The translations under genes were made by a program, and so were the position numbers. 44,243 nucleotides of DNA, from contig JAADVB010000159.1 in the NCBI GenBank assembly GCA_023334545.1, forward strand, positions 1-44,243, in the 5' to 3' direction. The notes under the pieces were generated by a model. It searched no databases, was not told the DNA's origin, and was given only the letters and a program-made list of their open reading frames with translations. The DNA comes from Salisapilia sapeloensis CBS 127946. Taxonomy: Eukaryota; Protista; Oomycota. Positions 706-17,114 of the stretch are shown here, in pieces (position 1 is the first letter of the stretch; the number at the start of each line of letters is the position of its first letter).

Positions 706-3700
706 TCATGTAGTCCCTCTACCCTTCCTTTGCAGAAATATCCATTCCTTCTGGTTCCTCTCTCGGTACTCTGGGAAGCTTTGGAGAATCTCTTCGTACT
801 TTTCCACCGTCAAGCGCAGCATCGTACACGTTCCGAGCGCAACACATGTGGCCGTCCGAGGAATATCAAAGAGCAACGACTTCTCTCCGAGGAAGTCGCA
901 CCGGCCTCGAATAAACTCTACGGTTTTCTCTTCCATGTCTTCGTTTCCAGCAGCATCGTCCATATCATCCGCTTGAGTTTGTTTAGTTACGATTGCACTT
1001 ATTCGTCTCCTGTTCCTCACTCCTGATACTACCGACCCTGAGTTCATCTTACGCACTCTCTTCGTTATCCTCACAGACACAGCTCCGTTTTCGATGACGA
1101 ACAAACTCTTGCATGTTTCGCCTTGACGGATGATCACGTCGCCTTGAACATACAACTCCTGCTCAAACGCAGCTAAGACGGCTCGGATGAAACCTTCGTC
1201 GCAGTGGGAAAACAGTGGCATGCCTCTGATCAAGTCTCGTAGGACGAAAAACGTAACGTCCTGAGTTCCAGCCATCGTTAGTCCGCGAAGTTGTTCCGCC
1301 TCATTCATACCCTTACTCTGCTGCCAATGAACGGCAAAATAGAGGCGGAGTTGCTTCCAGATTTCCGCGTCGAAGTTGTGTCGCTGCAAGTAGCTTGCCA
1401 CCCGAGCGACGCGCTCCTCATAGTCTGCTCGTTGTCCGAGCTCAGCTTCGTATACTTGGAAGAAGCTACCGGATAGCATGCCGAAGAAACCGATCGACAA
1501 AATAATGATGATCGTTGTCACGAGAGTCTCAATACCATTCTTCGGGGCAATGTCTCCGTAGGAGATGGTCGTAATGGCTCCTAAGCTAAAGTGCAAGGAT
1601 CTTGTTATCCGTCCTGAAATCGGAACAGAGTAGACACCATCAATTCCTGATATCGGAGTGAACGATAGCATTCCTGGTGTCGTCAGCCATGACGAAATAT
1701 CAGGGTATTCACGTAGCACACGGAACGAGATACCATAAAAGATGCAGGCGATCCAGTAGGCACCAAGTAGAAACCCAAACACGCTATGAGTGAAAGCGAT
1801 CATTGTAGGCGATGACGACCAAATGCGCAGATCATAGACGAGTGACTGATGAACCCGATCACCTAGACTTCGCAAGTGGATGAATCGCAGCATCTTGTTC
1901 AGTCTCAGAACGGAAATGTAGTACCAGGTCGGTGTTGACAATGTCCAAGAATCATTTTTACTGGTTGGGGCTGTGATGTAGCCAAGCAATTCTAGAGGTA
2001 ATAGAGTGAATAGATCAACCAAGTAAGATCCTTTGTAAAAGTAATGATCTCTAATCTCTTCGCTGTTCGTGACAATCTCACCTCGATGCATAAACGAAAA
2101 GTAGCTGCGATGAAGAATAAAGTCGATAGCACAGAGGACATCACCGACATATTCGCAGGAAAACCATATAGTAGTTGCCAATGGGACTGATACTACCTCC
2201 AGTGCATCAAAATCGAAGCTAACTCGAAATGGAATAACAATGACATAGTAGATGCAGACGATAAGCATGATGGCATCCCAAAGCCGACGGAAAGTGGATT
2301 GGTCCACAGAAAATGTTGCAGATTCAGATTTATCGATCCATGAATCGTACGACGATAAGATAGCACTAGCTCTACGCTTTGTCTCCGGTTGATGTGTAAT
2401 CGCTGATGGTGTCGGCTGCTCGACTACAGGAGCCACAGCTCGCTTATTATTAAGCTTATTCTTTAAAAGTCTTTTTAATTGGAAAGTTGCCATCAGGGTT
2501 TTCAATCCGTTCTCCGAAGAGGCTTCGGTCTTTGCTTTGACCGACGGTGCGTTGGTGCCACTTTCTAAATTTCTAGCTGTCTTCGTGCGAGTAGCATCCA
2601 TTCTTAGTCTAAAATCACGAATACACTCGATATTTTGCGATCGACCAAGCGATGTTACTCGTATCCCCGTCAAGAAAGCATGAGTTTTTAAATCCGATTG
2701 TCTTTGCGTCCCTGCATCTATTGTCATTTTCGCTACTTCCTGAGCATATTTCTTTTCATTCTGTTCAACAGTTGACAGGCCTTGATCGTTTAGACTGGGT
2801 ACTATACTCATGCTAGCACGTCGCGATTCATCTCGTCTTAAGCTTGTAGAAGATAATGGGCGCTGTCCATTACCATTCATATTAGCTTGTCGGCTTACCT
2901 GCTCACCGTTGGCATGATTGTAATGTTCCAGTGATTTCAGCAATCGTAAGTTTTCTGCATGGCGTTGCCAAAGCATGCTCTTAGCTGTCATTCCTGCAGA
3001 TACTACTGTCAAAGATGCCCGCCGCCCCGTCGATACGATTGAATGGCGAAGACTTTCACGGAGACTACGCTGGACAGAGGGATACTTTTCGTTTTTACTT
3101 GCACTCGGTGATACTTTAGCTGTGTTCCTGATCTTTGTCATGAAGGACATTGCGCTATTAGCCGATTTTGGTGATGTAGCTCCTACCGCGGTGGTAGATC
3201 TGACAGCGTTTGATATTAAGGTCAGTGATGGTCCCCGTTTGATGCCTGCTTTTGTAGGCCCAGCCGAATTAAAACCACTTTGACCTTTATAGGACTCGAA
3301 CAGCATACGCTTAAGCTTGTTATTGGAGCGTGCGAAAGTCCTCGTTTGACCGGTCTTGCTGGTTTGATTAATAAGAGATCCTATCATGTCACCAACTCGT
3401 GATTTTGACCGATTTCGCTTGTAATCTGTTTGGCTTTCCTGCTTTTTACCACTTTTTATCTCTGTCTGTCGGTTCTGTTGAGATGATTGACTTTCAGGCT
3501 TTAGATTCTTCAAAACATTCGCGTAAACCCAAACAGTTCGTCGATATTTGCGCTTCATAGCTATCATTAATTGCATTTCCAGTGCATTACGAACTTTTGC
3601 TGGCCATAACGTATTCCACTTCTGTCGACTTAGCTCTAGTATTTGACAACTCCGAATCGCTCGTGCAGTTGCAAGATGCGTCGTACCATGGAGAAAGAAA

Positions 3701-6700
3701 GCGAGATCTCCTATCATTGCCCCTTCGTACACCGTAGCATACACCATGCCTGAATTTGCGGACATCATTTCTCCCTGACCATCTTTTATAAAGAAGAGTT
3801 TCGATCCTATTCGACCTTCTTGAAAGATAATGTCTTTCCGGAGATACAAGGTCATCTCAAGCGCGTTCACGATAGCTTCGAGTTGAGATCGAGAACAAGC
3901 ATCTTTTAACTCGGGTACTTGGGAGGGAATATCGACGTATAAACACTCGAAAAACTGTGCACGTAGTATATCAGGCAAATCGGCAAAGATAGCTCGAGCC
4001 TGCGTTTCAACCAAAGATCTGGCACTAAACTCGATTCCTTCCTGCGCTCTCTTCGTCAAATGTCCCGGCAGCGCTCGGCGCTTGGCGTATTCTTTGAAGT
4101 CGTTCATAAGTTCTGCTAGTATTTTTGCATCCTATTCAGAGACGTCAATGTTAGCATATCGATCATGCTTCGATGGCAAAGAGATTGCGTACGAGATCCA
4201 TTTTCTGCATAACCGTTGTCATTTCCATAATGACCTACACAAGAAAACAACATAGAATATCATCAATTGGAGCGAAAGGATAAGTTTGACAAAGCGGATA
4301 ATTTACCTGTCCGATAAATATCCATCCAAGCAAACAGATAAGACTACAAAAGATTGTCTCGATTGGATTCTGAGCGACGATATCTCCAAAACAGACGACC
4401 GTGAACTACATATGACAAGAATTACGCTACTGGGTATGGTTGTGTCGGATAGTATGGGAAGTTACCGTCTCAAGAGACCAATAGATGGACCGAAGATATG
4501 CTATGCCAACGTCATTCGGGTTTTCGTTCAAAACAGGGTCTATCGTCATCCAACTCCTCGTCGCATATCCACTTTGTACCGACAACCTTCCAATCAAGAA
4601 GAAGGCGCTTCCAATCTGGTGAGCTGCTGACAAGAAGAAAATGAGGAACCGGACGAGATCAAACATACTTAAAAAAACGAGGCTTTTGCTGAGGAACTTT
4701 TCTTGCAGCACATCCTCAACCCCACGCAGGAATTCGAGCAACTGAGGACTTTTGATCATACGTGGTAATCGGCCTACAGACCTCAAGAAGAATGACTCTC
4801 CGAGGTAATCCAATGGTAACAAGCTTGCTGCATCGTATCGTAGCCGTCGTGTCTTGTATCGGGCGCGAATAAGTGGCCGGTTTAAGACACTTCCATTACC
4901 AAATTGCTTGTATCCAATGTGATTCCAAGCTAGATAAGCGTCCAAGAGAAGAATGACATCACTTGCAATATCCGATACCACGAACATCGACTCCATTTCT
5001 TCTGACGGTTCATGCAAAAAAGCAAGCCTTATTGGCGTCATGTAAAAGTTATATGCTAGAACAAGGTACATGAGCCAAGACCAGACCTTCGCAGTCCAAC
5101 CGAATGGATCGAGGATATAGTCTGAAGTTTCGCCTAAAGCACTCTGCTGACGTGTCTTTACAAAGGGCGCGATGCCACTCAGTAGTCTGTTCGTCTTCCC
5201 CAGTACTTTAAACAACTTTTTCTTGGAAGTAAGATTACTTTTAATGCGAACGAGCATATTCTCGTCAAACGTACGCTGAAGCTCAATAGTTTCAACAACA
5301 GGCTTCATTTCTTCCGGAAACCGCTGCACCATAGTAAGAAATTCCTCCCGAGGCAGCACTATTATCCGTGCGTTCTCCACAGCTACGGCATTAAGTTCAT
5401 ATGTCACCGATTCCTTTGTTGCTAAGCTTTCTTCACCAAACCACTGGTGCTCGACCACTCGTCGAACTGGGAGCTGGCTAAGCCACTGCGATTCCAAAAG
5501 CTTTTCCTTGGCGGTACTTAAGCGCCTGAGTTGACGTAGACGAGATATCGTGCTTCCGGATCTTTCGCTTTTAACTAAAGGTGGTGAAGGTCTATTTTGC
5601 GGTGGATATGTAAAGGATACAGGAGACAACAATTGATCAGAATTTCGCTTTGATGGCTTGTTCTGCTGAGCAAGTTCGAGCTGTGTCGATAGTTCAACAA
5701 CTCCAGCTTGAACGACAAACATGTCACTCGCAAGGTGACCAGCGGACGTGATGGGCATGCCTTTTAGGTAGACTTCGCAATGGACACAAGTGGATAATTC
5801 AAAAAGCAGTATGTGACGCCTCGGTGCTTCATTGAACATAGCGCACCGACCGAGTAGCTCATAATAAAGGTTCTTTTGCACCTCCTTTCGTAGAGATTGA
5901 GGTAGTTGAGCTAATATTTCATCTTCATTGACGCAACTTCCATTGATCGTCCACTTGGCAGAGTAGTATCTCCCAATCATACCTGCCACATCAGATGGGA
6001 TGCTCCCAGACGACATTAACGCTCGGTTTATTTGGAGAAGACGGTCTTTCTTTAGTCTATTTAAGGCATTCCATTGTGCCAGAACACTTGATATGGCACC
6101 TGCGGCTGTGTAACAAAGCAGTGCCCCAATGTAGATCCAGATAAAAGCCAGTAAGCACTCTTCTTGTGTCAATGGTATAATGTCTCCATAACCGACGGTA
6201 GAGATCATGACGACACTCCAGTGCATTGCTCGAATAAATGGAGAATCGATTTGGTACACAAATTTATCCCGGATAAACCATGTGCAGTTGTTGTGAAGAC
6301 TTGCAAGCGCAAGGCATTCCGTGTTAATATCAGACAAACTTCCAAAAGATGCAAGCGAGCGAATGGCTTCCTGACCTTCAGGAGTGGCTGGAATGCCGTC
6401 AACATAGCCATCTCGATCCGACATGATGTAAAAGATGGCTCCAGCACCATTGAGTAAAATTAGACACAGAATAAATAAACGCAGAAGCAACCGTGTCGAT
6501 GCACCAAGTTTCTTCTCCACCATTATTCGACGGAGAGCAAATGGGAGCCGATTCGTTCTTAGTAGGCGAAATAGGCGAAACAAGCCCATGAATCGAATAA
6601 CTCTGTCCGACATACCAATTTTGTTGACAAAATCCCAGCAAAGGGCAATCGGTAGATGCGAGATAATGTCTAATATGTATCTGTCATTCTCCAAGTAGTG

Positions 6701-9269
6701 CTGAATAATAGCTTTCCGTTTGTAAATGAGGTTTTGCGATTGAGATGTTGATTGTGATGCATCGACCGAGCCATTCATCGACCGAACGAACCACAATGCT
6801 CGCAGAGCCCAGTTAACGTATGAAAACATCTCCACGAGAACTGTAAGGCACATTAAGACAAATGCAAGCGTACCTGGATTGTGCTGAGATGTGTTCGGAG
6901 TCCCAATCGGTGCGAAGAGGTTAAATCCACGAAGGAAAGCAATCTGGTAAGGTACTTCAATGGCAGTGTACAGCAGCGCGAGGCAGTCCAACAATCTCCA
7001 GGTAGTGGCAAACTTGGAGTTGGGGAACCGCCATGGATGCACACTTTTCAGAGCATTCATGCTATCCTGTTCTAGGTTCTCCATCAATTTTCGCAGCGCT
7101 AATCCTTGTTTGGCATTGCAGCTAACACTTCCTGCGTTCGATTTGTTGCTTTTATTCCTCCCTTTTCCCGACTTTGGTTTGCCAGCAACTACCTGACTGT
7201 CATGCTCGTCTCCGTTATTTGCTCGATAGTGTGCTCGAAGTCGAACCATGCTAGTACGAGGGAAGTACTTGCGTAACATAAGATCAAAATTGCGTTTGGA
7301 CATCCACCAGCACTCGCAAGCGGCCTCGGCGATGATCTGGGAAGTAGAATAAGTGTAGCTAAATAAAGCGTCTTCGCCGAAAGAGCTGCCTGCTAGCAAC
7401 TGAGCAACGAATTCCCCCTTTGAGCTTGTCACTCGAAGCTCACCCTTTGTTACCATAAGCAGACGCTGTATTGAACCAAGTGCAAGAGCTGTCTGTTTCG
7501 GGGAAAAGAAGTCAACTTCCATAGTGTCCATGACGACATGGAGGAATGGTCCTGATTGCTTGCGGAACATTGGCACCTACGAACAACTACAGTGAGCAAT
7601 TGCATGATAAATACGTTATGTAGTAACTAACTCGCTTAATGATATTGTACTTGATATGATTATTGCACTTGAGATGATAGCGAGCTGGTAAGTCGTCCAA
7701 AACACGTTTTTCATCAAAGCCCTGACGAGCTGTCTGAATATACTGAAAATAATACCGCACATGTGCCGCGATATCCTTTGGGACGTCTCGAGCTATCATG
7801 AACTGCCCAGACACTATTTTAAAAAAAATTGATCGAAGTTACCATCAAAGTCGTCTTACCTTTACAGATTGGTCAAGATGCGTGCTAACGCTTGAGCTGA
7901 GATTTGGATTGCGTCGACTGAAGTAGAACCCACATGCTGATAGCATAGCTGTCGTCCAAAGGCCACTGCATAGCTGGACAAATAAACAATACACTGTCTC
8001 GAGTTGGTTAGCTGGAACGAGATCCCCTTGACCAAGCGTGGTAATTGTCTTGGCAGCCCAGTAAATAGTTCGAATGTATTTGCGCCACGGAGAACCATAG
8101 TGAAGTTGGTCTTTAGTGACCCAAGATCCATGTATCGCATCGTCCGCATTGTTGCATATCGCAAAATCAATTCCGCATTCAAAGTGAGCGATAAACATAT
8201 ACCCACTCGCGGCGATATGACATAAGTAGATACCAATCCAAACAAGGTTGACAAGTAACGCCGTTGTGCTGAATGACATGGCATGCACCAATTTCGTTCC
8301 TCGGTAAGCCTGTAAGAAGCCTACGTGATAGAAGTATGGCAAAAAATGAGTTGCCATTACCAGGCGAAAGAATCCTGCGACGTGAGTCAAATTATATTCT
8401 TGCATGAGTATGAAGAGCAAATCGAACGGTACGCAGGAGAGAAAACTGCCTAGAACCACTTTCGTGCTCGGCTGTTGCATCGAACTACGGAGAGAAGTCC
8501 GTTGTTTCGCGACATTTAACGGCGCAGTAAACTGTCGTTTCGCAACTTCTTCATTCGACGAACGTCTGCCAATACTTGAGCGAACTCGACGCTCACTTGC
8601 AGGCTGGACTTTCCTTGACATGTTTCTCTTTGAGCTGAAAACAGAACGTACCAAGAACAGAGGATGGTTTTGCTGGTAACTTTGCAGTAAAATCACGAAG
8701 TTCCATACTCGGAATGGCCACAATAGTAACTCGATCGCAGTGAGTATGGAGACATCCATCGTAAAGTCTATCCTTGCTGCGTCTGATTGCCATGGATCAA
8801 AACCAAAACCGAGTCTACCAGGTACAACAACGAGTGAAACGATCGCGTCTATCAAGCCGCCAAAATACCGACGATCTTCCCACTTTCTACTTCTTTTATC
8901 TGCATCACTCTCTTTATCCTTCTTTTTTCCTTCTGCTTCCCCCTCCGGATTGATCGCATTGCTCTGTTTTCTCCTCTCCTTAAACTTGTCATACGGAAAG
9001 AAGAGCATGCGTGGGAATAGGGACACAGTTTTCTGCTTTCGAAGCTTATCGCCAAGACGCCAAGTCGAACCTTGCCTTCCCAATTTTAAGTTAACAAGGC
9101 CGAAACTTGCGTTTTCAACTGCATCATTTGCCTTTGCTTTTTCCTCCTGGATACCCCGAAGTGTTTCTTTCTGAGCAATTTGATCGGCATAAGCGTTTTG
9201 AGTATTGGCAAAATCACGTCGTGTCGGACCAGTGTCTCCGTTCGGGAAGTCCGCCATGCCACTCGACAT
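706..9269 (-). CDS. Four-repeat (4x 6TM-pore-C-linker-CNBD) cyclic-nucleotide-binding-domain cation channel, CNGK/tetraKCNG-like architecture, ~2752 aa, 6 exons
   Basis: Hand-spliced exons 9269-7860, 7802-7632, 7576-4466, 4405-4307, 4234-4193 and 4131-706 are joined by five GT-AG phase-0 introns (57, 55, 60, 72, 61 nt) into one open frame. Four pore loops: WAAKTITTLGQGDL, WSVVMISTVGYGDI, WSLET|FTVVCFGDI, FSLGAITTISYGDI. Each is followed by a C-linker and CNBD (SFGEDAL, WFGEESL, MIGDLAF, FLGEKSLLFDIPRTAT). S4-like segments include LFRLFRLLRTNR and VLRLNKMLRFIHLR. Confidence 0.9.
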
Positions 9270-9523
9270 ATTTGATATATCCGCTTGGACTCTTTGTGTG
9301 AAGGTTGGCAGCCGTCGTGACGTCGGTTAGTTAGACTTAAATAGAAACGGAGAATGAAGAAACGAAACTCCTCTCTGTACGTTGCACATGAAACCTTAAT
9401 CTGCGCAAGGTCATGTTGTTCGTTTCTACGACAACATGAACGTATATTGATGTGCATCCGAGCAAACTGTTTTCGTACGAAGCAAAGAAAGAAAGAGTGA
9501 AAGGTTTGTATTAATTGCTTCCC

Positions 9524-12484
9524 TTACTCCACTTTCATCTCCCATGCCGCAGCGACTTTCATGCCCGGCTTGCGCACCACAGCAACGTCCTTGCTTTCAT
9601 CGTAAGTGACTTCCTTTTCCTCTCCGTTTACCACTGCTTTCTGTGGAATCTCTTTACCTGCCTGTCCCAGTCCGATGATTTCCACTCGCTCAATCCAGTT
9701 CTCAGCGTCGTACCCCACACGCTCAACGTTGCTGACCAAGCCACCGTCCCATCCGTACTTGACTACTGTGTACTCTTCCTTACTGATATGATCGAAGGAC
9801 GCTTCGTCATCGAGGTAGAGCACTCCTTCCGCCTTGCCGTCCTTGTCGACGCACACGACCAGCGTCAGCGGATCCTTGTGCATCAAGGACGCCGTCCGTC
9901 GCACTCGCTTCTTCGTCGGCAAAATACTACCACCTCGTTGGAAGACAGGAACATACTCTAGTGGTGCATCGACCTCTTGTTGTCCTCCTTCCAGCCGCTT
10001 GTAGCTGTCAAAGACATTGTACCAGACATCGTCAGTAGGGAGTTGGACAGTGGTCTTCCGCACGTTCTTCTCGACAATTGGTTTCATAAGCAAATCCTTT
10101 CCTAAGAGTACTTGATCCTCTACTTCAAACATATCTTGATACTCCATCCAGAGACTACGCAAGACTGGGAAGCCTGTCTTTTGATTCTCCCAGAACGTCG
10201 TGTAAATGTACGGCAGGAGCGAGTATCGGAAGCGAATCCAGTCGCGAAGAATGTCCGAGTACGGCTTATCCGCCAAATAAGGCTCTCGTCGAGCGGAATC
10301 GTGATGTGCATGGTTACGGAAGAATGGGTGGAACGTCGCGCTCTGGTGCCATCTGACCTGGAGCTCAGCTTCAGGTGACCCGAAGAACCCTCCGACGTCC
10401 GTCCCGACGAACGGAAGGCCGGCAGTGCTCAGAGATAGGAGCATCTTGGTGCCGTAGCTCAAGTGATCCCACTTGGCAGTATTGTCTCCCGTCCAGACAG
10501 CCCCGTAGCGTTGGGAGCCACTGAAGAAGGCTCGAGACAGGAGGAAGGGACGCTGGAGATCATCGGAGGAAGCGATGTATCCGCCCATAGTCATGTCAGC
10601 GTCTTCAATCTCATTTTGAGGTTTACGCAGTTGCCGAGTGATCTGACCGAGCACCGTCGCCATCTGCATGTAGATCCCATACATGTTATGCCACTCCCGA
10701 TGCTCGACGCCATCGAGAGACAGCATGTGCTTGGGCATAGACACTTCTGGTCCATTGAAGACGGACGGTTCGTTCATGTCGTTCCAAGTGAACAAGGACG
10801 GCGTGCTGCCAACGTACTTTTCGAAATTGAATAACGAAGCCCACCACTTTCGAGCTTTTGCGTTCGTAAAGTCGACGTAGGAGCTCGATCCAGGCCAGCA
10901 CCAGCCATCGAAAGCAGCGTCTTTCGATCCATCCAGGACGTACATACCTTTTCTTGCTGCTTCTTCATGGACAAAATAGTCTTTCTTCCCGTTCTTAATG
11001 TGTGGGTCGATGATCGTCACCATCTTCCGCTGGACACGGTTGACGTACTCTTGCATGCCGACAGGATCAGGGAACGCGTGGGGGTCCCACGTGAAGTACA
11101 TGCGTTCGATCAAGTGGTCAATGTCGAGCCATAGGACGTCACACGGAATGAGCTGTTCGTCGAACGTGTCGCTGACAGTCTTGATATCGTCTTCTCCCTT
11201 ATAGTTCCAACGAGACTGGTGGTAACCTAGAGAGAAGAGAGGTGGCAGATAAGGATACCCTGTGAGCTCAGCATACTGCCGATAGAAATCTCGAGAAGTA
11301 GGTCCGAGCAAAAGGAAGAGATCTAGTACGCCTGATTCACTACTAAAGAAAGCTGTCTTGTCTTCCTTGTCGGACGTGAAGAGGTCTACGAACGTCTCGG
11401 ACGGATTGTGGTGGAAGGCGCCGACGGTCGAATGGCCATTGGGAGCCACTAGCAGAGGGATACTGCCGTACAACGCCATGGGTTCATCTAGTTCGTACTC
11501 AAAGACATCTAGATTGTACAGTCGGTACGGATCGGTCGTTTGCTCGTATGCAGAGGACTCGGTGTTCCATTCGAGCGTGTCCTTGAGCAAGTAGTCTGTC
11601 GCGTGTTCTGGGATACCATATAGTTTCCGGTGGTTGTGGAAAGTAATGTCGAGACCGACGGACGACGGACCGAACTTTTTCACGTCCGTATGACCGCCAA
11701 ACTTTTCTTCCCACACGAGATCTTCCGTTGCGGGCGTCTTATCCGTTTCAGATGCGACTGACTTCTCTTGGATCGTCCCATCTTCGTAAATCGCTAGGCC
11801 GTCTTCACCGTAGTCGACAATCTTCTTGCCGTCATGAACGTCCGCCTCGACGGTAACCTCGGCAATATCCGCACTAGCTTCCTTCCTTTGGAGCAAACGA
11901 GGCTCAAAGTAAAAGTGGCTGTTGGAATTGGCAGACACGACTTTCTCCACCCCATTGTACACTTCAAAGACAAAGGACGCGAGGTACAGGACGACTGTGA
12001 TATCTGGATACGACTGGGGAGAGTATAGTCGGATTTCTTCATTCGGATTGAATCCTGCGATCGAAACCGACGATATATCTACTTCCTGGAGAGGGAAGCG
12101 AGTCAATGCAGGTTCCTGTAGCACATCCGGGTTCTCCCATCTCGTGCGAGGATCATTCGCATCGGCAAAGTCCTCCGTGACGTGCATACGTACGGCTGGC
12201 GTCTGGTCATGATGGTTCAAAACGAACGATAGCTGACCTTGCAGAGGCGTAGTGGAGTCAGGAGAGGTTAGATGGAAGGAAACGACATCGTCCGAGTGCT
12301 GGATCGAGTCTGCTTGGACTTGGTAGTTATGATACGGACGAGCCGACTGGTCGCTCGTAGCACGATGGACTCGGCAAAATGACGTTTGGTCGCAAGTACG
12401 GAACTTGCTCCTATCGACTGCATCTACTGCACTCAGTTGAAGCAAAAGGAGTGCGATCGGAAGCAACAGCGCCACCGCTCGCAT
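9524..12484 (-). CDS. GANAB: Glucosidase II alpha subunit (neutral alpha-glucosidase AB, GH31), 986 aa, intronless
   Basis: Signal peptide followed by AVDRSKFRTCDQTSFCRVHR, the typical GII-alpha N-terminus. Also YRLYNLDVFEY, GYHQSRWNY, catalytic nucleophile motif WNDMNEPSVFNGPE, acid/base motif VWTGDN, and FFRNHAHHDSARREP. Confidence 0.95.
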   Translation of the reverse strand: MRAVALLLPIALLLLQLSAVDAVDRSKFRTCDQTSFCRVHRATSDQSARPYHNYQVQADSIQHSDDVVSFHLTSPDSTTPLQGQLSFVLNHHDQTPAVRMHVTEDFADANDPRTRWENPDVLQEPALTRFPLQEVDISSVSIAGFNPNEEIRLYSPQSYPDITVVLYLASFVFEVYNGVEKVVSANSNSHFYFEPRLLQRKEASADIAEVTVEADVHDGKKIVDYGEDGLAIYEDGTIQEKSVASETDKTPATEDLVWEEKFGGHTDVKKFGPSSVGLDITFHNHRKLYGIPEHATDYLLKDTLEWNTESSAYEQTTDPYRLYNLDVFEYELDEPMALYGSIPLLVAPNGHSTVGAFHHNPSETFVDLFTSDKEDKTAFFSSESGVLDLFLLLGPTSRDFYRQYAELTGYPYLPPLFSLGYHQSRWNYKGEDDIKTVSDTFDEQLIPCDVLWLDIDHLIERMYFTWDPHAFPDPVGMQEYVNRVQRKMVTIIDPHIKNGKKDYFVHEEAARKGMYVLDGSKDAAFDGWCWPGSSSYVDFTNAKARKWWASLFNFEKYVGSTPSLFTWNDMNEPSVFNGPEVSMPKHMLSLDGVEHREWHNMYGIYMQMATVLGQITRQLRKPQNEIEDADMTMGGYIASSDDLQRPFLLSRAFFSGSQRYGAVWTGDNTAKWDHLSYGTKMLLSLSTAGLPFVGTDVGGFFGSPEAELQVRWHQSATFHPFFRNHAHHDSARREPYLADKPYSDILRDWIRFRYSLLPYIYTTFWENQKTGFPVLRSLWMEYQDMFEVEDQVLLGKDLLMKPIVEKNVRKTTVQLPTDDVWYNVFDSYKRLEGGQQEVDAPLEYVPVFQRGGSILPTKKRVRRTASLMHKDPLTLVVCVDKDGKAEGVLYLDDEASFDHISKEEYTVVKYGWDGGLVSNVERVGYDAENWIERVEIIGLGQAGKEIPQKAVVNGEEKEVTYDESKDVAVVRKPGMKVAAAWEMKVE

Positions 12485-12715: not shown

Positions 12716-14106
12716 TCAAAAGACAATTACAATGGCTGTAATGTCATCGACGTTTTCATCCTCGGATTCCCACCGCGTCAAGGCTGCTTCAACCAGCTGA
12801 TCGCATGCTTCCTGGGGTGAACGTCGGTCGTCTAGGAGCCATTGGCCAACGAGACGCATTACCTCTTCATTCGAAAGGAACTCCCACACACCATCACTTG
12901 CCAAGACGATAAATCCGTTCATGTCTGTGTCATCTGCCGCCTTGGATATGTCTTGAATAGGCAAGTCGGTTAGCAGCGTCACGTCTGGATCGCACGTGAC
13001 GCCGATGGACTTGGCTACACTGTCGCCTAGAGACCGGGACATGGCTAGACCTGGGACATCCATGTCCTGCAGCCAGACTCTCGAGCATCCATAGGAAAAT
13101 ACTCGTCCACCATGCTCTTCAATCCGACGTCTTTCATCGAATTTATCAGGTTTATGATCTTCCGTTGCAGCATGTAATTGAAATCGATTGGACTTCTTTG
13201 GAGTATAATGCACGACGATCGCTCGACTATCTCCGACATTGGTCAAAAGTAACTTGGTATCGGATACCAAGCAACTGACAAACGTCGTTCCGGACACGCT
13301 GATGTCCATGCTACTATTCCGAGACAGCCAGACATCCATTTGGGACGACAGAAGAGGTAGAAGATTGGAGAGACGAGTGACATTAGTTTTGAAAGGTTTG
13401 CATGAAGTTTCAGAGGGAGATGCTGGACTGGAGGTATTGGAGATGGCCTCTTTCAGGATATGGAGATACTCCTCCCGAACGGCTTGGCTGATGAACGCTC
13501 CTTTCGGACCATGGCCGTCCATGACTGCGAAATACGTTGTCGAAGTATCATTGTTGACGCAATCGCATATGCACAAAGAGTCTTGGTTTTCCTTTCGGCG
13601 ACGCATAAAGTCACTTCCGGCCCTACATCTCGATCCCCATTGCAAACTACCATTCCTCGACTACACACCACGCCGATAGAGTTAGTACGTTCATCGGTAT
13701 GATGCAGGATGAAAGAAACTGAGGTCGACCATCCCAATTTTATAACGATAAGAGAAGAGAATGCAGAGTTTCGTACCTTGGAATGTAAAGGTTGACTAGC
13801 AGTGTACTCTGGAAGATCTGCCTTGTCGTCCGAGAGCGCTTTTCCGGGGATACCTCCACCGTAATAAATAAATTCTGTCGAGTCACTTGGAAGAAGGCCC
13901 GTGTAACTAGGTCCAAAATCCTCCTGCTTGAGCGGACTAGTGGGTTTGCTGTTGTCATGCACCCGCGGTCGCTCTAAAGTCGTAACAACTCGCGGGCGTC
14001 GTGTCGGCGGCGTGATCGTCGAGTCGCTTCCATATAGTTTTTCATACCGATGGTCTGTATGCTGGAAAAAGTGCTCCGGGCAGAACTTTGTCACGAGACA
14101 ACCCAT
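12716..14106 (-). CDS. PP2C (PPM-family) protein phosphatase with predicted N-terminal myristoylation/palmitoylation (MGC), 2 exons
   Basis: Exon 1 14106-13777 (MGCLVTKF...LHSK), intron 13776-13661 (GTACGA...GTGTAG), exon 2 13660-12716. PP2C motifs ENQD, VMDGHG, SGTT, NVGDSR, DHKPD, GLAMSRSLGD, LASDGVWE, DDITA. Confidence 0.88.
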
Positions 14107-14374: not shown

Positions 14375-17114
14375 ATGGAAACGATATCCAGAGCTCTCGT
14401 TGCTGTGTCGATACCAATATTCGATGTTTATCGTGCTATACTTCTTTGCGTTGCGCTTGAGTGCCTACTGACTGCATCCTCTTATCCATTGATCGCAGAT
14501 GTGCCGTACAATTCCGCTCTTCCTTTGGAAGACGAGTCGGTTTTGGCGATTACAATTCCGCAATTGTCACCAGGCATGCATGTCAATGGGTATGAACTGG
14601 TTGAAAATGCTGGTTTTCTAGGGGTCTGTCACTATGACGATGCTCCTACTAGCTATGTGGATTCAACTCAATCTCTCGTTGCGATTGATCCTGAAACCCA
14701 CTTTTCGCTACAGCGATTCGACACGTATGATCTCGAGGATTTAACGTGTCCAAACGATTTCGTTGACAGAGCAGAGAGTAATAGTTATAACTTGGCTTTA
14801 ATTCCCAAAGTGCAGCCTACTATCGAACATCAAGTACGTGTCACTAAAATGAACTACGTATATTAAGTAACTTCTTTTTGTGTTATAGTGTCTATTACAG
14901 GCATCCGCAGCGTCCGAATCAGATCATGTTCCTCCCAACTACTCTCTCCATTCAAAATTCGCAGCCGGAGCACATGGTGAGCTCTGGCGAGCTGTGCACA
15001 AAGAGCTTGGTTTCCAAATCGTATTGAAACGACTCTTTCCAACGCTGTCTTCTAAAGTCGAAATGGGTCTACGAGAAGCCTACTTTGGTCACTTGCTACA
15101 AAACCATAGCTTACATATTGCACGCTTCATCGAGTATTTTACCTATCCCAGTACATCCGACATGGACAGTCGAGAGATATGGCTGGCATTCAAGGATGAA
15201 GGCTCATCGTTACGTGAGTACCTTTATACTGCTCCATCCATGCCAAGTGCTGGAACGAACCAGCCGATGATGTACGAGCCGTCCTCATTCTGGCACTCCC
15301 TTCGATCGTCCGAAGCAGGGGAAGTGGTATTGAAAGACATCTTGCGACAGGTTTTAGAATCCTTGTGTGTCCTCCACAAGCATAACGTTACGCATCGTGA
15401 TTTAAAACCTTCCAATCTCCTTGTGCATGTAGAAGCGTCCGATTCATCGGACCGACCGCGTCGGCCTCCAATCGTCAAACTAGCTGATTTCGGATCCGCC
15501 ATCGACTCGTACACGTTACAGCATCTCTATACAAACGGCCCATCCGAGAAAGAAGAGACAGTTGAGTATCAACCTCCAGAAGTTTTATTCAGCTCTGTTC
15601 AACAACCTTTCTATCCGTTTCGCCCAGAGTCCTATGACCTATGGTCTATGGGCGTTCTGATGCTCGAACTCCTCTTTGGCTCGCCATCCGTTTTCCAGCC
15701 AGTAGCAGAGCACAAGCGTAGGAAGACAGGTCAGCATAGTGCAAACACTGTGCACGACGTCATCACGCAAGAGTTCTGTCTCCAAGGCTTGTACTACACG
15801 CCGCCGTCGTCACAGAAGGAAGCTCTCGTTGCCATGTCCTGCTCCTTTGCAGATTTCCACGCCAGTGTCAAGCGCCGAGACCCGTACCATCGTGGGTTTT
15901 GGGACGAATGGGGAGTCGATCTGATCTACCGACTGCTGCAGTGGGACCCGATGCATCGTATCTCGGCAAAGCAGGCGCTGCAACACGCCTTCTTCCAAGG
16001 TGCATTTGTGTGTCCTACGACCGGTAGACGCTTTGCCACCAAATCGGAGATGGAGACACATCAGAGGTACCTTCAAATTCAACGACAGCGCGGGAGTGGT
16101 CGTGTGGACGAGTCAGGAGAAGAGATAGGAGAAGCGTTCCTGCAGGTGGACATGCATCTGGTAGAAGTGGACAATATAACCTGTCCTCATTGTGGAAGGA
16201 AGTTCAGTACGGTCGATGGGTGCGAACGACACTTGAGTAGTAGACGCCATGCACATTCGTTCTGTTCGTTTCACTATGCACAGGATCTGGAGGAAGCGAT
16301 CGATGCCCAAACGTCCCATGTGAGCTTAAAGACTGCAGCTGATATGTCCATTTATCAAAACCAGAAAAAGTATATGGAAGACTACGTCTCGACAGAGTAC
16401 ATTCAAGGTCCAAAGGATAACTTTATGCTGTACGTAATTGCGGATGGACACATGGGGAGTCTCGTGGCTGAGTACGTCGTCCAGCATGCATCCGACGTGT
16501 TGCTGGCGGAACTTGCAGACGCCGACTATGAAGTCGCTTTGTATCGGACATTCTACCACTTGCAGCAGCAGGTCACGCACGCTTTACTCGCGTCTAAGGA
16601 CGAACAGGAGCAATTTGCTGGGTCGACACTGACGCTAGTCCTTCACTTGGAAGACCAAGATCGTTTTCTGGCCGCGAATGTTGGTGACTCGACGGCAATA
16701 GTCATGACCTACGATGATGGTAAGGATATGGAGTGGCTACAGCTGACGCAAGACCACTGGCCCCAGTTTGAACGCGAGCGGATTGAGAAGAATGGCGGTT
16801 TCGTTGCGTTGAAAGGACGATGGCGTGTACAAGGACAGTTGGCAGTCTCGAGAAGCCTAGGAGACCTCTACTTGCGCCAATTTCTCACATCTGAACCATT
16901 TGTGCGAGATGTCAAGTTGGAAGGAGGAAAGTCATGGATGCTGGTGGCGGCGTCAGATGGATTATGGGAAGCCATGGAACCCAACATTGTGGCTGCGTAT
17001 GCGAAAGAAAAAGTTCAAGCAGGACAAAGGATGCGTGCAAAGGACTTGGTGATGCAGAGTTGTGTGCGAGGCAGTCGTGACAATGTCGTTGTCGTAGTGG
17101 ATTATGGTGGATGA
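14375..17114 (+). CDS. Fusion protein: N-terminal hydrophobic segment + Ser/Thr kinase + C2H2 zinc finger + PP2C phosphatase, ~890 aa, 2 exons
   Basis: Exon 1 14375-14833, intron 14834-14900 (GTACGT...TTACAG), exon 2 14901-17114. Splicing restores kinase subdomain I (FAAGAHGELWRA) ahead of IVLKR, HRDLKPSN, LADFG, EYQPPE, DLWSMG and RISAKQALQHAFF. Finger CPHC-x12-H-x5-H. PP2C motifs YMED, IADGHMG, GSTL, NVGDS, LAVSRSLGD, ASDGLWE, DNVVV. Confidence 0.88.

What the first reader, a model, noticed from the sequence alone, without database searches (positions are those of the whole stretch)
706..9269. Single-chain four-repeat cyclic-nucleotide-gated-type channel hidden across split ORFs
Seen: the ORF track shows separate fragments, but five clean phase-0 GT-AG introns join six exons into ~2752 aa carrying four complete S1-S6/pore/C-linker/CNBD units. 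Two tiny exons (4405-4307, 4234-4193) are absent from the ORF track yet supply the third pore and S6. Established: most CNBD channels (CNG, HCN, EAG, plant AKT) are tetramers of single-repeat subunits, while concatenated four-repeat forms are best known as CNGK in animal sperm chemotaxis. Inference: this is a pseudo-tetrameric channel that could act in flagellated-cell (zoospore) signalling. I cannot verify whether this stramenopile form has been described.
Basis: partly seen in the sequence, partly recalled or inferred. Interest (0 to 1): 0.85.

Follow-up and report, generated by a model that had tools for sequence, protein, structure and literature searches.

The report
Four-repeat cyclic-nucleotide channel gene, oomycete
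One minus-strand gene of an oomycete-like organism encodes a 2752-residue ion channel in which all four pore-forming units, each with its own cyclic-nucleotide-binding domain, sit in a single chain; it belongs to an old stramenopile family that is in the databases but that I could not find described, and that seems to have arisen separately from the similar sperm channel (CNGK) of animals.

Summary
Exons 9269-7860, 7802-7632, 7576-4466, 4405-4307, 4234-4193 and 4131-706 (minus strand) are joined by five phase-0 GT..AG introns of 55-72 nt. They give one 2752-aa ORF with four units, each of S1-S6, pore, C-linker and CNBD.

Support comes from homology, not RNA:
- All five junctions align without gaps to 2461-2900-aa proteins of Lagenidium, Aphanomyces and Platysulcus.
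- Three introns sit at the same codons in the Lagenidium ortholog.
- GH31 and PP2C neighbours are shared with Lagenidium.

Public RNA runs hardly cover the gene, so no junction is confirmed by reads.

Repeats cluster by position across stramenopiles. The four repeats of an amphioxus four-repeat protein (presumed CNGK) cluster with each other, and AU tests reject positional orthology (p 0.018 and 0.005). It is CNGK-like in design but probably not a CNGK family member.

The pore is fixed as asymmetric (TLGQG, TVGYG, VVCFG, TISYG), and only CNBD4 keeps the canonical PRTAT cassette. A zoospore role is inferred, not shown.

Other first-stage notes in this scan report further four-repeat paralogs elsewhere in this genome; I did not check them. 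Novelty: new variant of a known kind.

The parts
7860..9269 (-). Exon 1 (aa 1-470): ATG at 9269, N-terminal cytoplasmic stretch of about 120 aa, then repeat 1 S1-S6 with pore filter TLGQGD (8022-8039). The S4 region (8343-8378) is almost uncharged.
   Evidence: An AlphaFold2 model of aa 121-470 has pLDDT 79 and pTM 0.75. Its best PDB matches over the whole length are GORK, SKOR, AKT1, HCN1 and CNGA1.
7803..7859 (-). Intron 1, 57 nt, GT..AG, phase 0
   Evidence: The Lagenidium ortholog P0005 has an intron at the same codon position (...AVR|FVIARD).
7632..7802 (-). Exon 2 (aa 471-527): C-linker of repeat 1
   Evidence: Aligns without gaps to homologs across both junctions.
7577..7631 (-). Intron 2, 55 nt, GT..AG, phase 0
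   Evidence: This intron is absent from the Lagenidium ortholog, where the sequence is continuous.
4466..7576 (-). Exon 3 (aa 528-1564), one uninterrupted ORF. It holds CNBD1 (cassette 7328-7384, no Arg) and all of repeat 2: S4 RFMGLFRLFRLLRTNR at 6548-6595, filter TVGYGD at 6182-6199, and CNBD2 cassette at 5381-5443 with no Arg and an inserted loop. It also holds the repeat 2-3 linker and repeat 3 from S1 to the pore helix.
   Evidence: Links repeats 1, 2 and 3 without needing any splice.
4406..4465 (-). Intron 3, 60 nt, GT..AG, phase 0, inside the pore loop of repeat 3
   Evidence: Same position in Lagenidium (...WCLET|FTVVCFGD).
4307..4405 (-). Exon 4 (aa 1565-1597, 33 aa): repeat 3 selectivity filter VVCFGD (4382-4399) and most of S6
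   Evidence: The VVCFGD filter is conserved in Lagenidium P0005, in Platysulcus and in two unnamed relatives.
4235..4306 (-). Intron 4, 72 nt, GT..AG, phase 0. It carries an in-frame stop, so it must be removed.
   Evidence: Absent from Lagenidium, where exons 4 and 5 form one exon.
4193..4234 (-). Exon 5 (aa 1598-1611, 14 aa): end of S6 of repeat 3
4132..4192 (-). Intron 5, 61 nt, GT..AG, phase 0
   Evidence: Same position in Lagenidium (...NMDQ|DAHEL). One RNA contig (X3) starts exactly at 4131, the first base of exon 6.
706..4131 (-). Exon 6 (aa 1612-2752 plus stop at 708-706). It holds C-linker 3 and CNBD3 (cassette 3658-3717, key Arg replaced by His). Next comes a Ser/Arg/Lys-rich linker of about 400 aa (2326-3507) with several RRxS motifs. 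Repeat 4 follows (721-2325): S4 at 1870-1905, filter TISYGD at 1552-1569, and CNBD4 with the canonical cassette FLGEKSLLFDIPRTAT (838-894).

Best explanation
Shown: the minus strand at 9269-706 carries one gene for a 2752-aa pseudo-tetrameric channel of the CNBD-channel superfamily. It has four non-identical units (about 20% identity to each other), each with six transmembrane segments, a P-loop, a C-linker and a CNBD. It belongs to a family of 2200-2900-aa proteins found in oomycetes (Lagenidium, Pythium, Phytophthora, Achlya, Aphanomyces) and in the stramenopiles Platysulcus and Cantina. In that family repeat n is orthologous to repeat n, so the four-repeat chain appears to predate the divergence of those lineages. 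The closest full-length relative is Lagenidium N0F65_010407, which shares three intron positions and GH31/PP2C neighbours.

Inferred from the tree: repeats pair as (1,3) and (2,4), which fits a 1-to-2-to-4 duplication. The concatenation is independent of the one that gave animal CNGK.

Inferred mechanism: one chain folds round a single pore lined by four different filters (TLGQG, TVGYG, VVCFG, TISYG). It is built on a K+ channel scaffold, but K+ selectivity is probably weakened or altered. Only CNBD4 keeps the Arg/Thr cassette that binds the cyclic phosphate. The channel is therefore most likely opened or modulated by one cAMP or cGMP molecule at repeat 4, with the other three CNBDs acting as structural parts of the gating ring. 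This would be the same one-site logic as sea-urchin CNGK. Repeat 2 keeps a regular Arg-rich S4, so voltage probably modulates gating. RRxS motifs in the CNBD2 and CNBD4 loops and in the repeat 3-4 linker suggest phosphorylation control.

Biological role (inferred, weakest step): signalling in the flagellated zoospore stage.
For: - Gene model.
- Domains. PDB sequence matches run from S1 through the CNBD of HCN1, KCNH2, SthK and CNGA1. The R1 fold model matches 6TM CNBD-clade channels.
- Single chain: exon 3 alone runs from CNBD1 through repeat 2 into repeat 3. All junctions align gaplessly to the 2461-2900-aa homologs, including a complete 2900-aa ORF from a Platysulcus transcript.
- Introns: three of five positions are shared with the independently annotated Lagenidium gene.
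- Synteny: channel, PP2C and GH31 lie within 20 kb both in the window and in Lagenidium.
- Positional orthology: the core positional clades (11-12 stramenopile proteins for each repeat) have SH-aLRT 97-99, except R1 in the second tree (83). The R1+R3 and R2+R4 pairings have 87 and 92.
- Independence from CNGK: the four amphioxus P0307 repeats group together (93). Forcing R1 with R1 costs 36.6 lnL (p-AU 0.018), and forcing R3 with R3 costs 49.1 lnL (p-AU 0.005).
- Selection on the odd residues: TLGQGD is identical in window, three Lagenidium paralogs and P. nicotianae. VVCFGD is shared with Platysulcus. PR[TS]A is kept in CNBD4 across most of the family.
- Stage: cyclic-nucleotide-gated channel genes as a class are expressed mostly in sporangia and zoospores of P. 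infestans (PMC5322657). Here the gene is near-silent (depth 2-5) while the neighbouring GH31 gene has depth about 100-220.
Against: - No RNA read or contig spans a predicted junction.
- Two low-depth contigs run unspliced into introns 3 and 4 (4256-4448 and 4422-4513). The only joint seen (4434-4484) has GT..AG on the opposite strand.
- Ion selectivity, ligand and gating are read from motifs only. KCNH channels and zebrafish CNGK show that a CNBD need not confer nucleotide gating (PMC7576140 and PMC4749565).
- The independence claim rests on one animal sequence whose identity as CNGK is presumed, on a quick-search tree with long branches, and on groups named after the tree was seen.
- The organism's life cycle is not known to me, so a zoospore stage is assumed from its oomycete affinity.
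Confidence: 0.72

Rival explanations
1. It is a true member of the CNGK family: the four-repeat chain was assembled once, before stramenopiles and animals diverged or with later transfer, and the tree fails to show this because of saturation.
For: The architecture is the same, and the same (1,3)/(2,4) repeat pairing is reported for CNGK (PMC7576140; here). Both have one dominant ligand site (PMC4749565). Identities between repeats are only about 20-25%, so deep signal is weak.
Against: The four amphioxus repeats group together and sit next to single-repeat channels. AU tests reject the R1 and R3 positional constraints. Another unnamed four-repeat protein (P0047) also has its four repeats as one clade, which shows that concatenation recurs. 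The filters are not the all-GYG/GFG set of CNGK.
Confidence: 0.15
2. The four-repeat chain is real, but the CNBDs are not ligand sensors. The channel would be gated by voltage, pH or phosphorylation, as in KCNH channels or zebrafish CNGK, with the CNBDs acting only as a structural ring.
For: Three of four cassettes lack the key arginine. Repeat 2 has a regular Arg-rich S4. There are many RRxS motifs. Zebrafish CNGK is pH-gated and not nucleotide-gated.
Against: CNBD4 keeps the full FGE...PRTAT cassette, and this is conserved in most family members back to Platysulcus. That conservation is hard to explain without ligand binding.
Confidence: 0.2
3. The locus is two or more separate genes or a decaying pseudogene, and the long ORF is an artefact of choosing convenient splice sites.
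For: There is no junction-spanning RNA. Unspliced low-depth contigs cover introns 3 and 4. Expression is very low. Filters and three CNBDs are degenerate.
Against: The 2752-aa frame is intact, including about 400 aa of low-complexity linker. Exon 3 alone bridges three repeats. The alignment is collinear with full-length homologs and with a complete transcript ORF. Introns are conserved. The 'degenerate' residues are themselves conserved among orthologs.
Confidence: 0.04

Closest known systems
CNGK (tetraKCNG), the K+-selective cyclic-nucleotide-gated channel of animal sperm and choanoflagellates
   Same: One chain of four 6TM-pore-C-linker-CNBD repeats. Repeats pair (1,3) and (2,4). Only one CNBD is expected to be functional (the third in sea urchin, the fourth here). 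Linked to flagellated cells (PMC4749565 and PMC7576140).
   Different: Filters are TLGQG/TVGYG/VVCFG/TISYG instead of GYG or GFG in all four repeats. The repeats are not positionally orthologous to those of the amphioxus four-repeat protein. The protein is longer (2752 aa), with a linker of about 400 aa before repeat 4 and inserted loops in CNBD2 and CNBD4. No functional data exist.
Unnamed oomycete and stramenopile four-repeat CNBD proteins, e.g. Lagenidium giganteum N0F65_010407 (DAZ97245.1), Pythium brassicae PybrP1_008099, P. infestans 'Ion transport protein' (2533 aa) and the Platysulcus tardus 2900-aa transcript
   Same: Collinear over the full length (23-36% identity to those aligned in full). 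Each repeat falls in the matching positional clade. Three introns and the GH31/PP2C neighbourhood are shared with Lagenidium. Same filter pattern within the subclade.
   Different: The window protein is a divergent ortholog from a lineage whose glucosidase II is only 47-55% identical to that of any sequenced oomycete. It has two extra introns, and CNBD3 has lost its arginine, as in N0F65_010407.
[quoted passage not shown] 2020, PMC7576140)
   Same: Concatenated CNBD-channel repeats in the same organisms, with repeats specialised by position.
   Different: Two repeats, not four. The Aphanomyces pair 4712/4713 are near-identical tandem paralogs and not halves of one four-repeat gene.
Single-repeat CNBD channels with solved structures: SthK, LliK, HCN1/4, KCNH2, CNGA1, SKOR/GORK
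   Same: These are the best sequence and fold matches for individual repeats, from S1 through the CNBD.
   Different: They assemble from four separate subunits and their filters are symmetric.
BeCNG1 of the chytrid Blastocladiella emersonii
   Same: A candidate cGMP-gated K+ channel proposed to act in zoospore phototaxis and flagellar control (PMC4046227). It is a functional analogy for a zoospore role.
   Different: It is from a fungus, has a GYGD filter, and its repeat number was not verified here. It was not compared by sequence.

Membership tests
CNBD-channel superfamily (HCN/CNG/KCNH/plant Shaker-type/SthK) | 6TM unit with S4, P-loop and S6, followed by a C-linker and a cyclic-nucleotide-binding domain | tested here: met
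   Four cNMP_binding hits above cut-off and four Ion_trans or Ion_trans_2 modules. R4 aligns to HCN1 residues 139-531 and R2 to SKOR 139-449. The R1 model matches GORK, HCN1 and CNGA1.
CNGK | Four 6TM-CNBD repeats in one polypeptide | tested here: met
   Supported by collinear homologs and conserved introns. Not yet supported by RNA.
CNGK | GYG or GFG K+ signature in the pore loops (PMC4749565) | tested here: not met
   R1 GQG, R2 GYG, R3 CFG, R4 SYG.
CNGK | Repeats orthologous position by position to CNGK repeats (common origin of the concatenation) | tested here: not met
   The amphioxus P0307 repeats form one clade. AU tests give p 0.018 for R1 and 0.005 for R3. Caveat: one presumed CNGK sequence and a quick-search tree.
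CNGK | Activation by cGMP and K+ selectivity, measured | not testable with these tools
   Needs electrophysiology.
Stramenopile four-repeat CNBD channels (unnamed) | Full-length collinearity, with each repeat in its positional clade | tested here: met
Stramenopile four-repeat CNBD channels (unnamed) | Shared gene structure and neighbourhood with an oomycete ortholog | tested here: met
   Three of five intron positions are identical. The trio of channel, PP2C and GH31 is present in both loci, in rearranged order.
Two-repeat tandem CNBD channels (PMC7576140) | Exactly two repeats per chain | tested here: not met
   Four full units.

The most novel reading that the evidence does not exclude
Stramenopiles assembled their own single-chain four-repeat CNBD channel before oomycetes, Platysulcus and Cantina diverged, independently of animal CNGK. 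In the oomycete subclade it was fixed as an obligatorily asymmetric pore (GQG/GYG/CFG/SYG) driven by a single ligand site. That would make it a natural hetero-filter channel whose selectivity (possibly not K+) and one-molecule gating control zoospore behaviour, and which animals and plants lack.
Probability: 0.35. Interest if true: 0.7.

Novelty: new variant of a known kind. Interest (0 to 1): 0.55.

Why it matters
Concatenation into one chain lets each quarter of a channel evolve on its own. Known cases are Nav and Cav channels and, among cyclic-nucleotide channels, animal CNGK.

A second, apparently independent and very old four-repeat CNBD family would show that this route is recurrent. It again shows (1,3)/(2,4) pairing and reduction to one intact ligand site, which suggests convergence on the same design.

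The conserved odd filters offer a natural test of how much asymmetry a K+-type pore tolerates.

For oomycete biology it adds a candidate link between cAMP/cGMP and membrane potential in swimming spores. The published survey of these channels lists only two-repeat forms in oomycetes, so this family appears to have been overlooked, although its proteins are in public databases.

Tried and rejected
- RNA support. Six public RNA runs (X1-X6) were laid on 4000-8000 and 4000-9600. The gene is covered only by a few contigs at depth 2-5, and none spans a junction, so splicing is untested by reads.
- Halves-of-one-gene idea. I asked whether the published 'two-repeat' oomycete channels are halves of mis-split four-repeat genes. 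This was rejected for Aphanomyces 4712/4713, whose N-terminal parts are near-identical paralogs. It was not checked for P. infestans XP_002907851.
- Word-indexed search with Lagenidium P0005 alone returned only oomycete relatives. A 19-sequence profile was needed to reach one animal protein. No named choanoflagellate, sea-urchin or fungal CNGK/BeCNG1 sequence could be brought into the tree.
- The ESM Atlas look-up gave only generic CNBD-channel clusters.
- I had recalled BeCNG1 as four-repeat. The paper read does not say so, and the claim is dropped.
- Literature searches pairing CNGK or pseudo-tetrameric terms with stramenopile or oomycete terms found nothing beyond PMC7576140.
- A pseudogene reading was rejected because the unusual residues are conserved among orthologs.


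Full report
**Observation**

The minus strand between 9269 and 706 shows four long ORF fragments. Each exon length is a multiple of three. The five introns are 57, 55, 60, 72 and 61 nt, and all are GT..AG and phase 0. The product is 2752 aa with one terminal stop. The 33-aa and 14-aa micro-exons are too short for the ORF list. Intron 4 carries an in-frame stop, so it cannot be read through.

**Domains**

- Pfam finds four cNMP_binding domains above the curated cut-off and four channel modules.
- A repeat HMM built from the aligned family finds four complete units at aa 121-652, 705-1307, 1344-1819 and 2214-2748. They are only 18-24% identical to each other.
- Individual repeats match solved CNBD channels from S1 to the CNBD. 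The matches include SthK, LliK, HCN1, KCNH2, CNGA1 and SKOR.
- Repeat 1 has the weakest Pfam score. Folded with a 17-sequence alignment (pLDDT 79, pTM 0.75), it matches GORK, SKOR, AKT1, HCN1 and CNGA1 over its whole length.

**Is it one gene?**

- Exon 3 alone is a continuous ORF from CNBD1 through all of repeat 2 into S1-S5 of repeat 3.
- An exhaustive HMMER search with exon 3 found proteins of 2461-2900 aa that are collinear with the model. By their database names these are three Lagenidium giganteum proteins, Phytophthora cinnamomi, Aphanomyces stellatus and a complete 2900-aa ORF from a Platysulcus tardus transcript.
- All five junctions align to the full-length ones among these without gaps. 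The micro-exon residues are highly conserved.
- In the Lagenidium gene for P0005, the annotated introns fall at the same codons as window introns 1, 3 and 5. Window exons 4 and 5 are a single exon there.
- That Lagenidium locus also carries PP2C and GH31 genes within 20 kb. In the window, PP2C (12716-13645), GH31 (9527-12484) and the channel follow one another on the minus strand.

**RNA**

Six small public RNA runs of 'organism A' were laid on the region. The GH31 neighbour is covered by 3-kb contigs at depth about 100-220, ending near 9425-9568. The channel has only a few contigs at depth 2-5.

- None of those contigs spans a junction.
- Two run unspliced into introns 3 and 4.
- One starts exactly at 4131, the first base of exon 6.
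- One ends at 9278, nine bases upstream of the ATG.
- The single joint seen (skips 4434-4484) has GT..AG on the plus strand, so it belongs to an antisense RNA.

The splice model therefore rests on homology, not on reads.

**Organism**

The GH31 protein is 47-55% identical to glucosidase II of every oomycete order and 41-48% identical to that of diatoms and brown algae. No near-identical protein is in the database. This points to an oomycete-like stramenopile outside the well-sampled groups.

**Family and history**

Further named members of 2200-2900 aa occur in these taxa:

- Achlya hypogyna
- Pythium oligandrum and P. brassicae
- Phytophthora lilii, oleae, citrophthora, cactorum, nicotianae, pseudosyringae, ramorum and infestans
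- Cantina marsupialis

In repeat-level maximum-likelihood trees, stramenopile repeats cluster by position. The core clades of 11-12 proteins per repeat have SH-aLRT 97-99, apart from R1 in the second tree (83). The pairings are R1+R3 (87) and R2+R4 (92). The chain therefore appears to have been assembled before these lineages diverged, probably by a 1-to-2-to-4 duplication.

The only animal four-repeat protein I could retrieve is Branchiostoma belcheri P0307 (2225 aa), presumed to be the amphioxus CNGK. Its four repeats form one clade next to single-repeat channels. Forcing its R1 or R3 into the stramenopile positional clades is rejected (p-AU 0.018 and 0.005). An unnamed protein, P0047, behaves the same way. 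Concatenation has therefore probably happened more than once. Caveats: one animal sequence, quick searches, long branches, and groups named after seeing the tree.

**Functional reading**

- Filters: TLGQGD, TVGYGD, VVCFGD and TISYGD. The same pattern recurs in three Lagenidium paralogs and P. nicotianae. VVCFGD in repeat 3 reaches back to Platysulcus, where the other three filters are canonical. The asymmetry is therefore selected, not decay.
- CNBDs: only CNBD4 has the FGE...PRTAT cassette, and PR[TS]A is kept there in most of the family. CNBD3 has an Arg in many relatives but His here and Gln in the Lagenidium ortholog. CNBD1 and CNBD2 lack it throughout.
- S4: Arg-rich and regular in repeat 2, nearly uncharged in repeat 1.
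- Loops and linker: loops inserted in CNBD2 and CNBD4, and the Ser/Arg/Lys-rich linker before repeat 4, carry RRxS motifs in several members.

The most likely mechanism is a single-pore cation channel on a K+ scaffold, gated or modulated by one cyclic nucleotide at repeat 4. Voltage and phosphorylation would act as modifiers. None of this has been measured.

**Literature**

The survey of CNBD channels in eukaryotes reports four-repeat CNGK only in animals and choanoflagellates, and 'for the first time' two-repeat tandems in oomycetes (PMC7576140). CNGK properties are taken from PMC4749565. Cyclic-nucleotide-gated channel genes as a class are spore-induced in P. infestans (PMC5322657). I found no paper describing the stramenopile four-repeat family.

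**Verdict**

The gene is a new variant of a known kind. It is a member of a family that is present in databases and that I did not find described.

Noticed in passing
window 4434-4484 (+ strand): One RNA contig (run X2, 80 nt, depth 2.9) skips 51 nt whose ends are GT..AG on the plus strand, antisense to the channel gene and overlapping its pore-3 region. This suggests a spliced antisense transcript.
   Followed up: partly
window 9524-12484 (-): A glucosidase II alpha (GH31) gene of 986 aa in one ORF. It is well expressed (contig depth about 100-220), and its transcript contigs end at about 9425-9568. Since one channel contig ends at 9278, about 150 nt are left for the channel promoter.
   Followed up: partly
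window 12716-13645 (-) and 14994-17114 (+): A PP2C gene and a kinase / C2H2-finger / PP2C fusion lie head to head. A PP2C gene also lies next to the channel ortholog in Lagenidium.
   Followed up: partly
L001 1-18256 (Lagenidium giganteum NSDO01000224.1): Three four-repeat CNBD channel genes (2619, 2575 and 2461 aa) lie side by side. The locus tag of a fourth (N0F65_010408, 2755 aa), on the same contig, is adjacent to that of the 2461-aa gene. This is a local paralog cluster.
   Followed up: partly
P0047 and relatives P0043, P0046, P0121 (unnamed ENA proteins, about 2100-2400 aa): The four repeats of P0047 form one clade (SH-aLRT 99) beside single-repeat channels. This hints at yet another independent concatenation, in an organism I could not identify.
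   Followed up: no
window 2326-3507 (-), aa 1820-2213: A linker of about 400 aa, rich in Ser, Arg and Lys, lies between repeats 3 and 4 and has three RRAS motifs. The linkers of the relatives differ in sequence but carry up to about ten R[RK]x[ST] motifs.
   Followed up: partly
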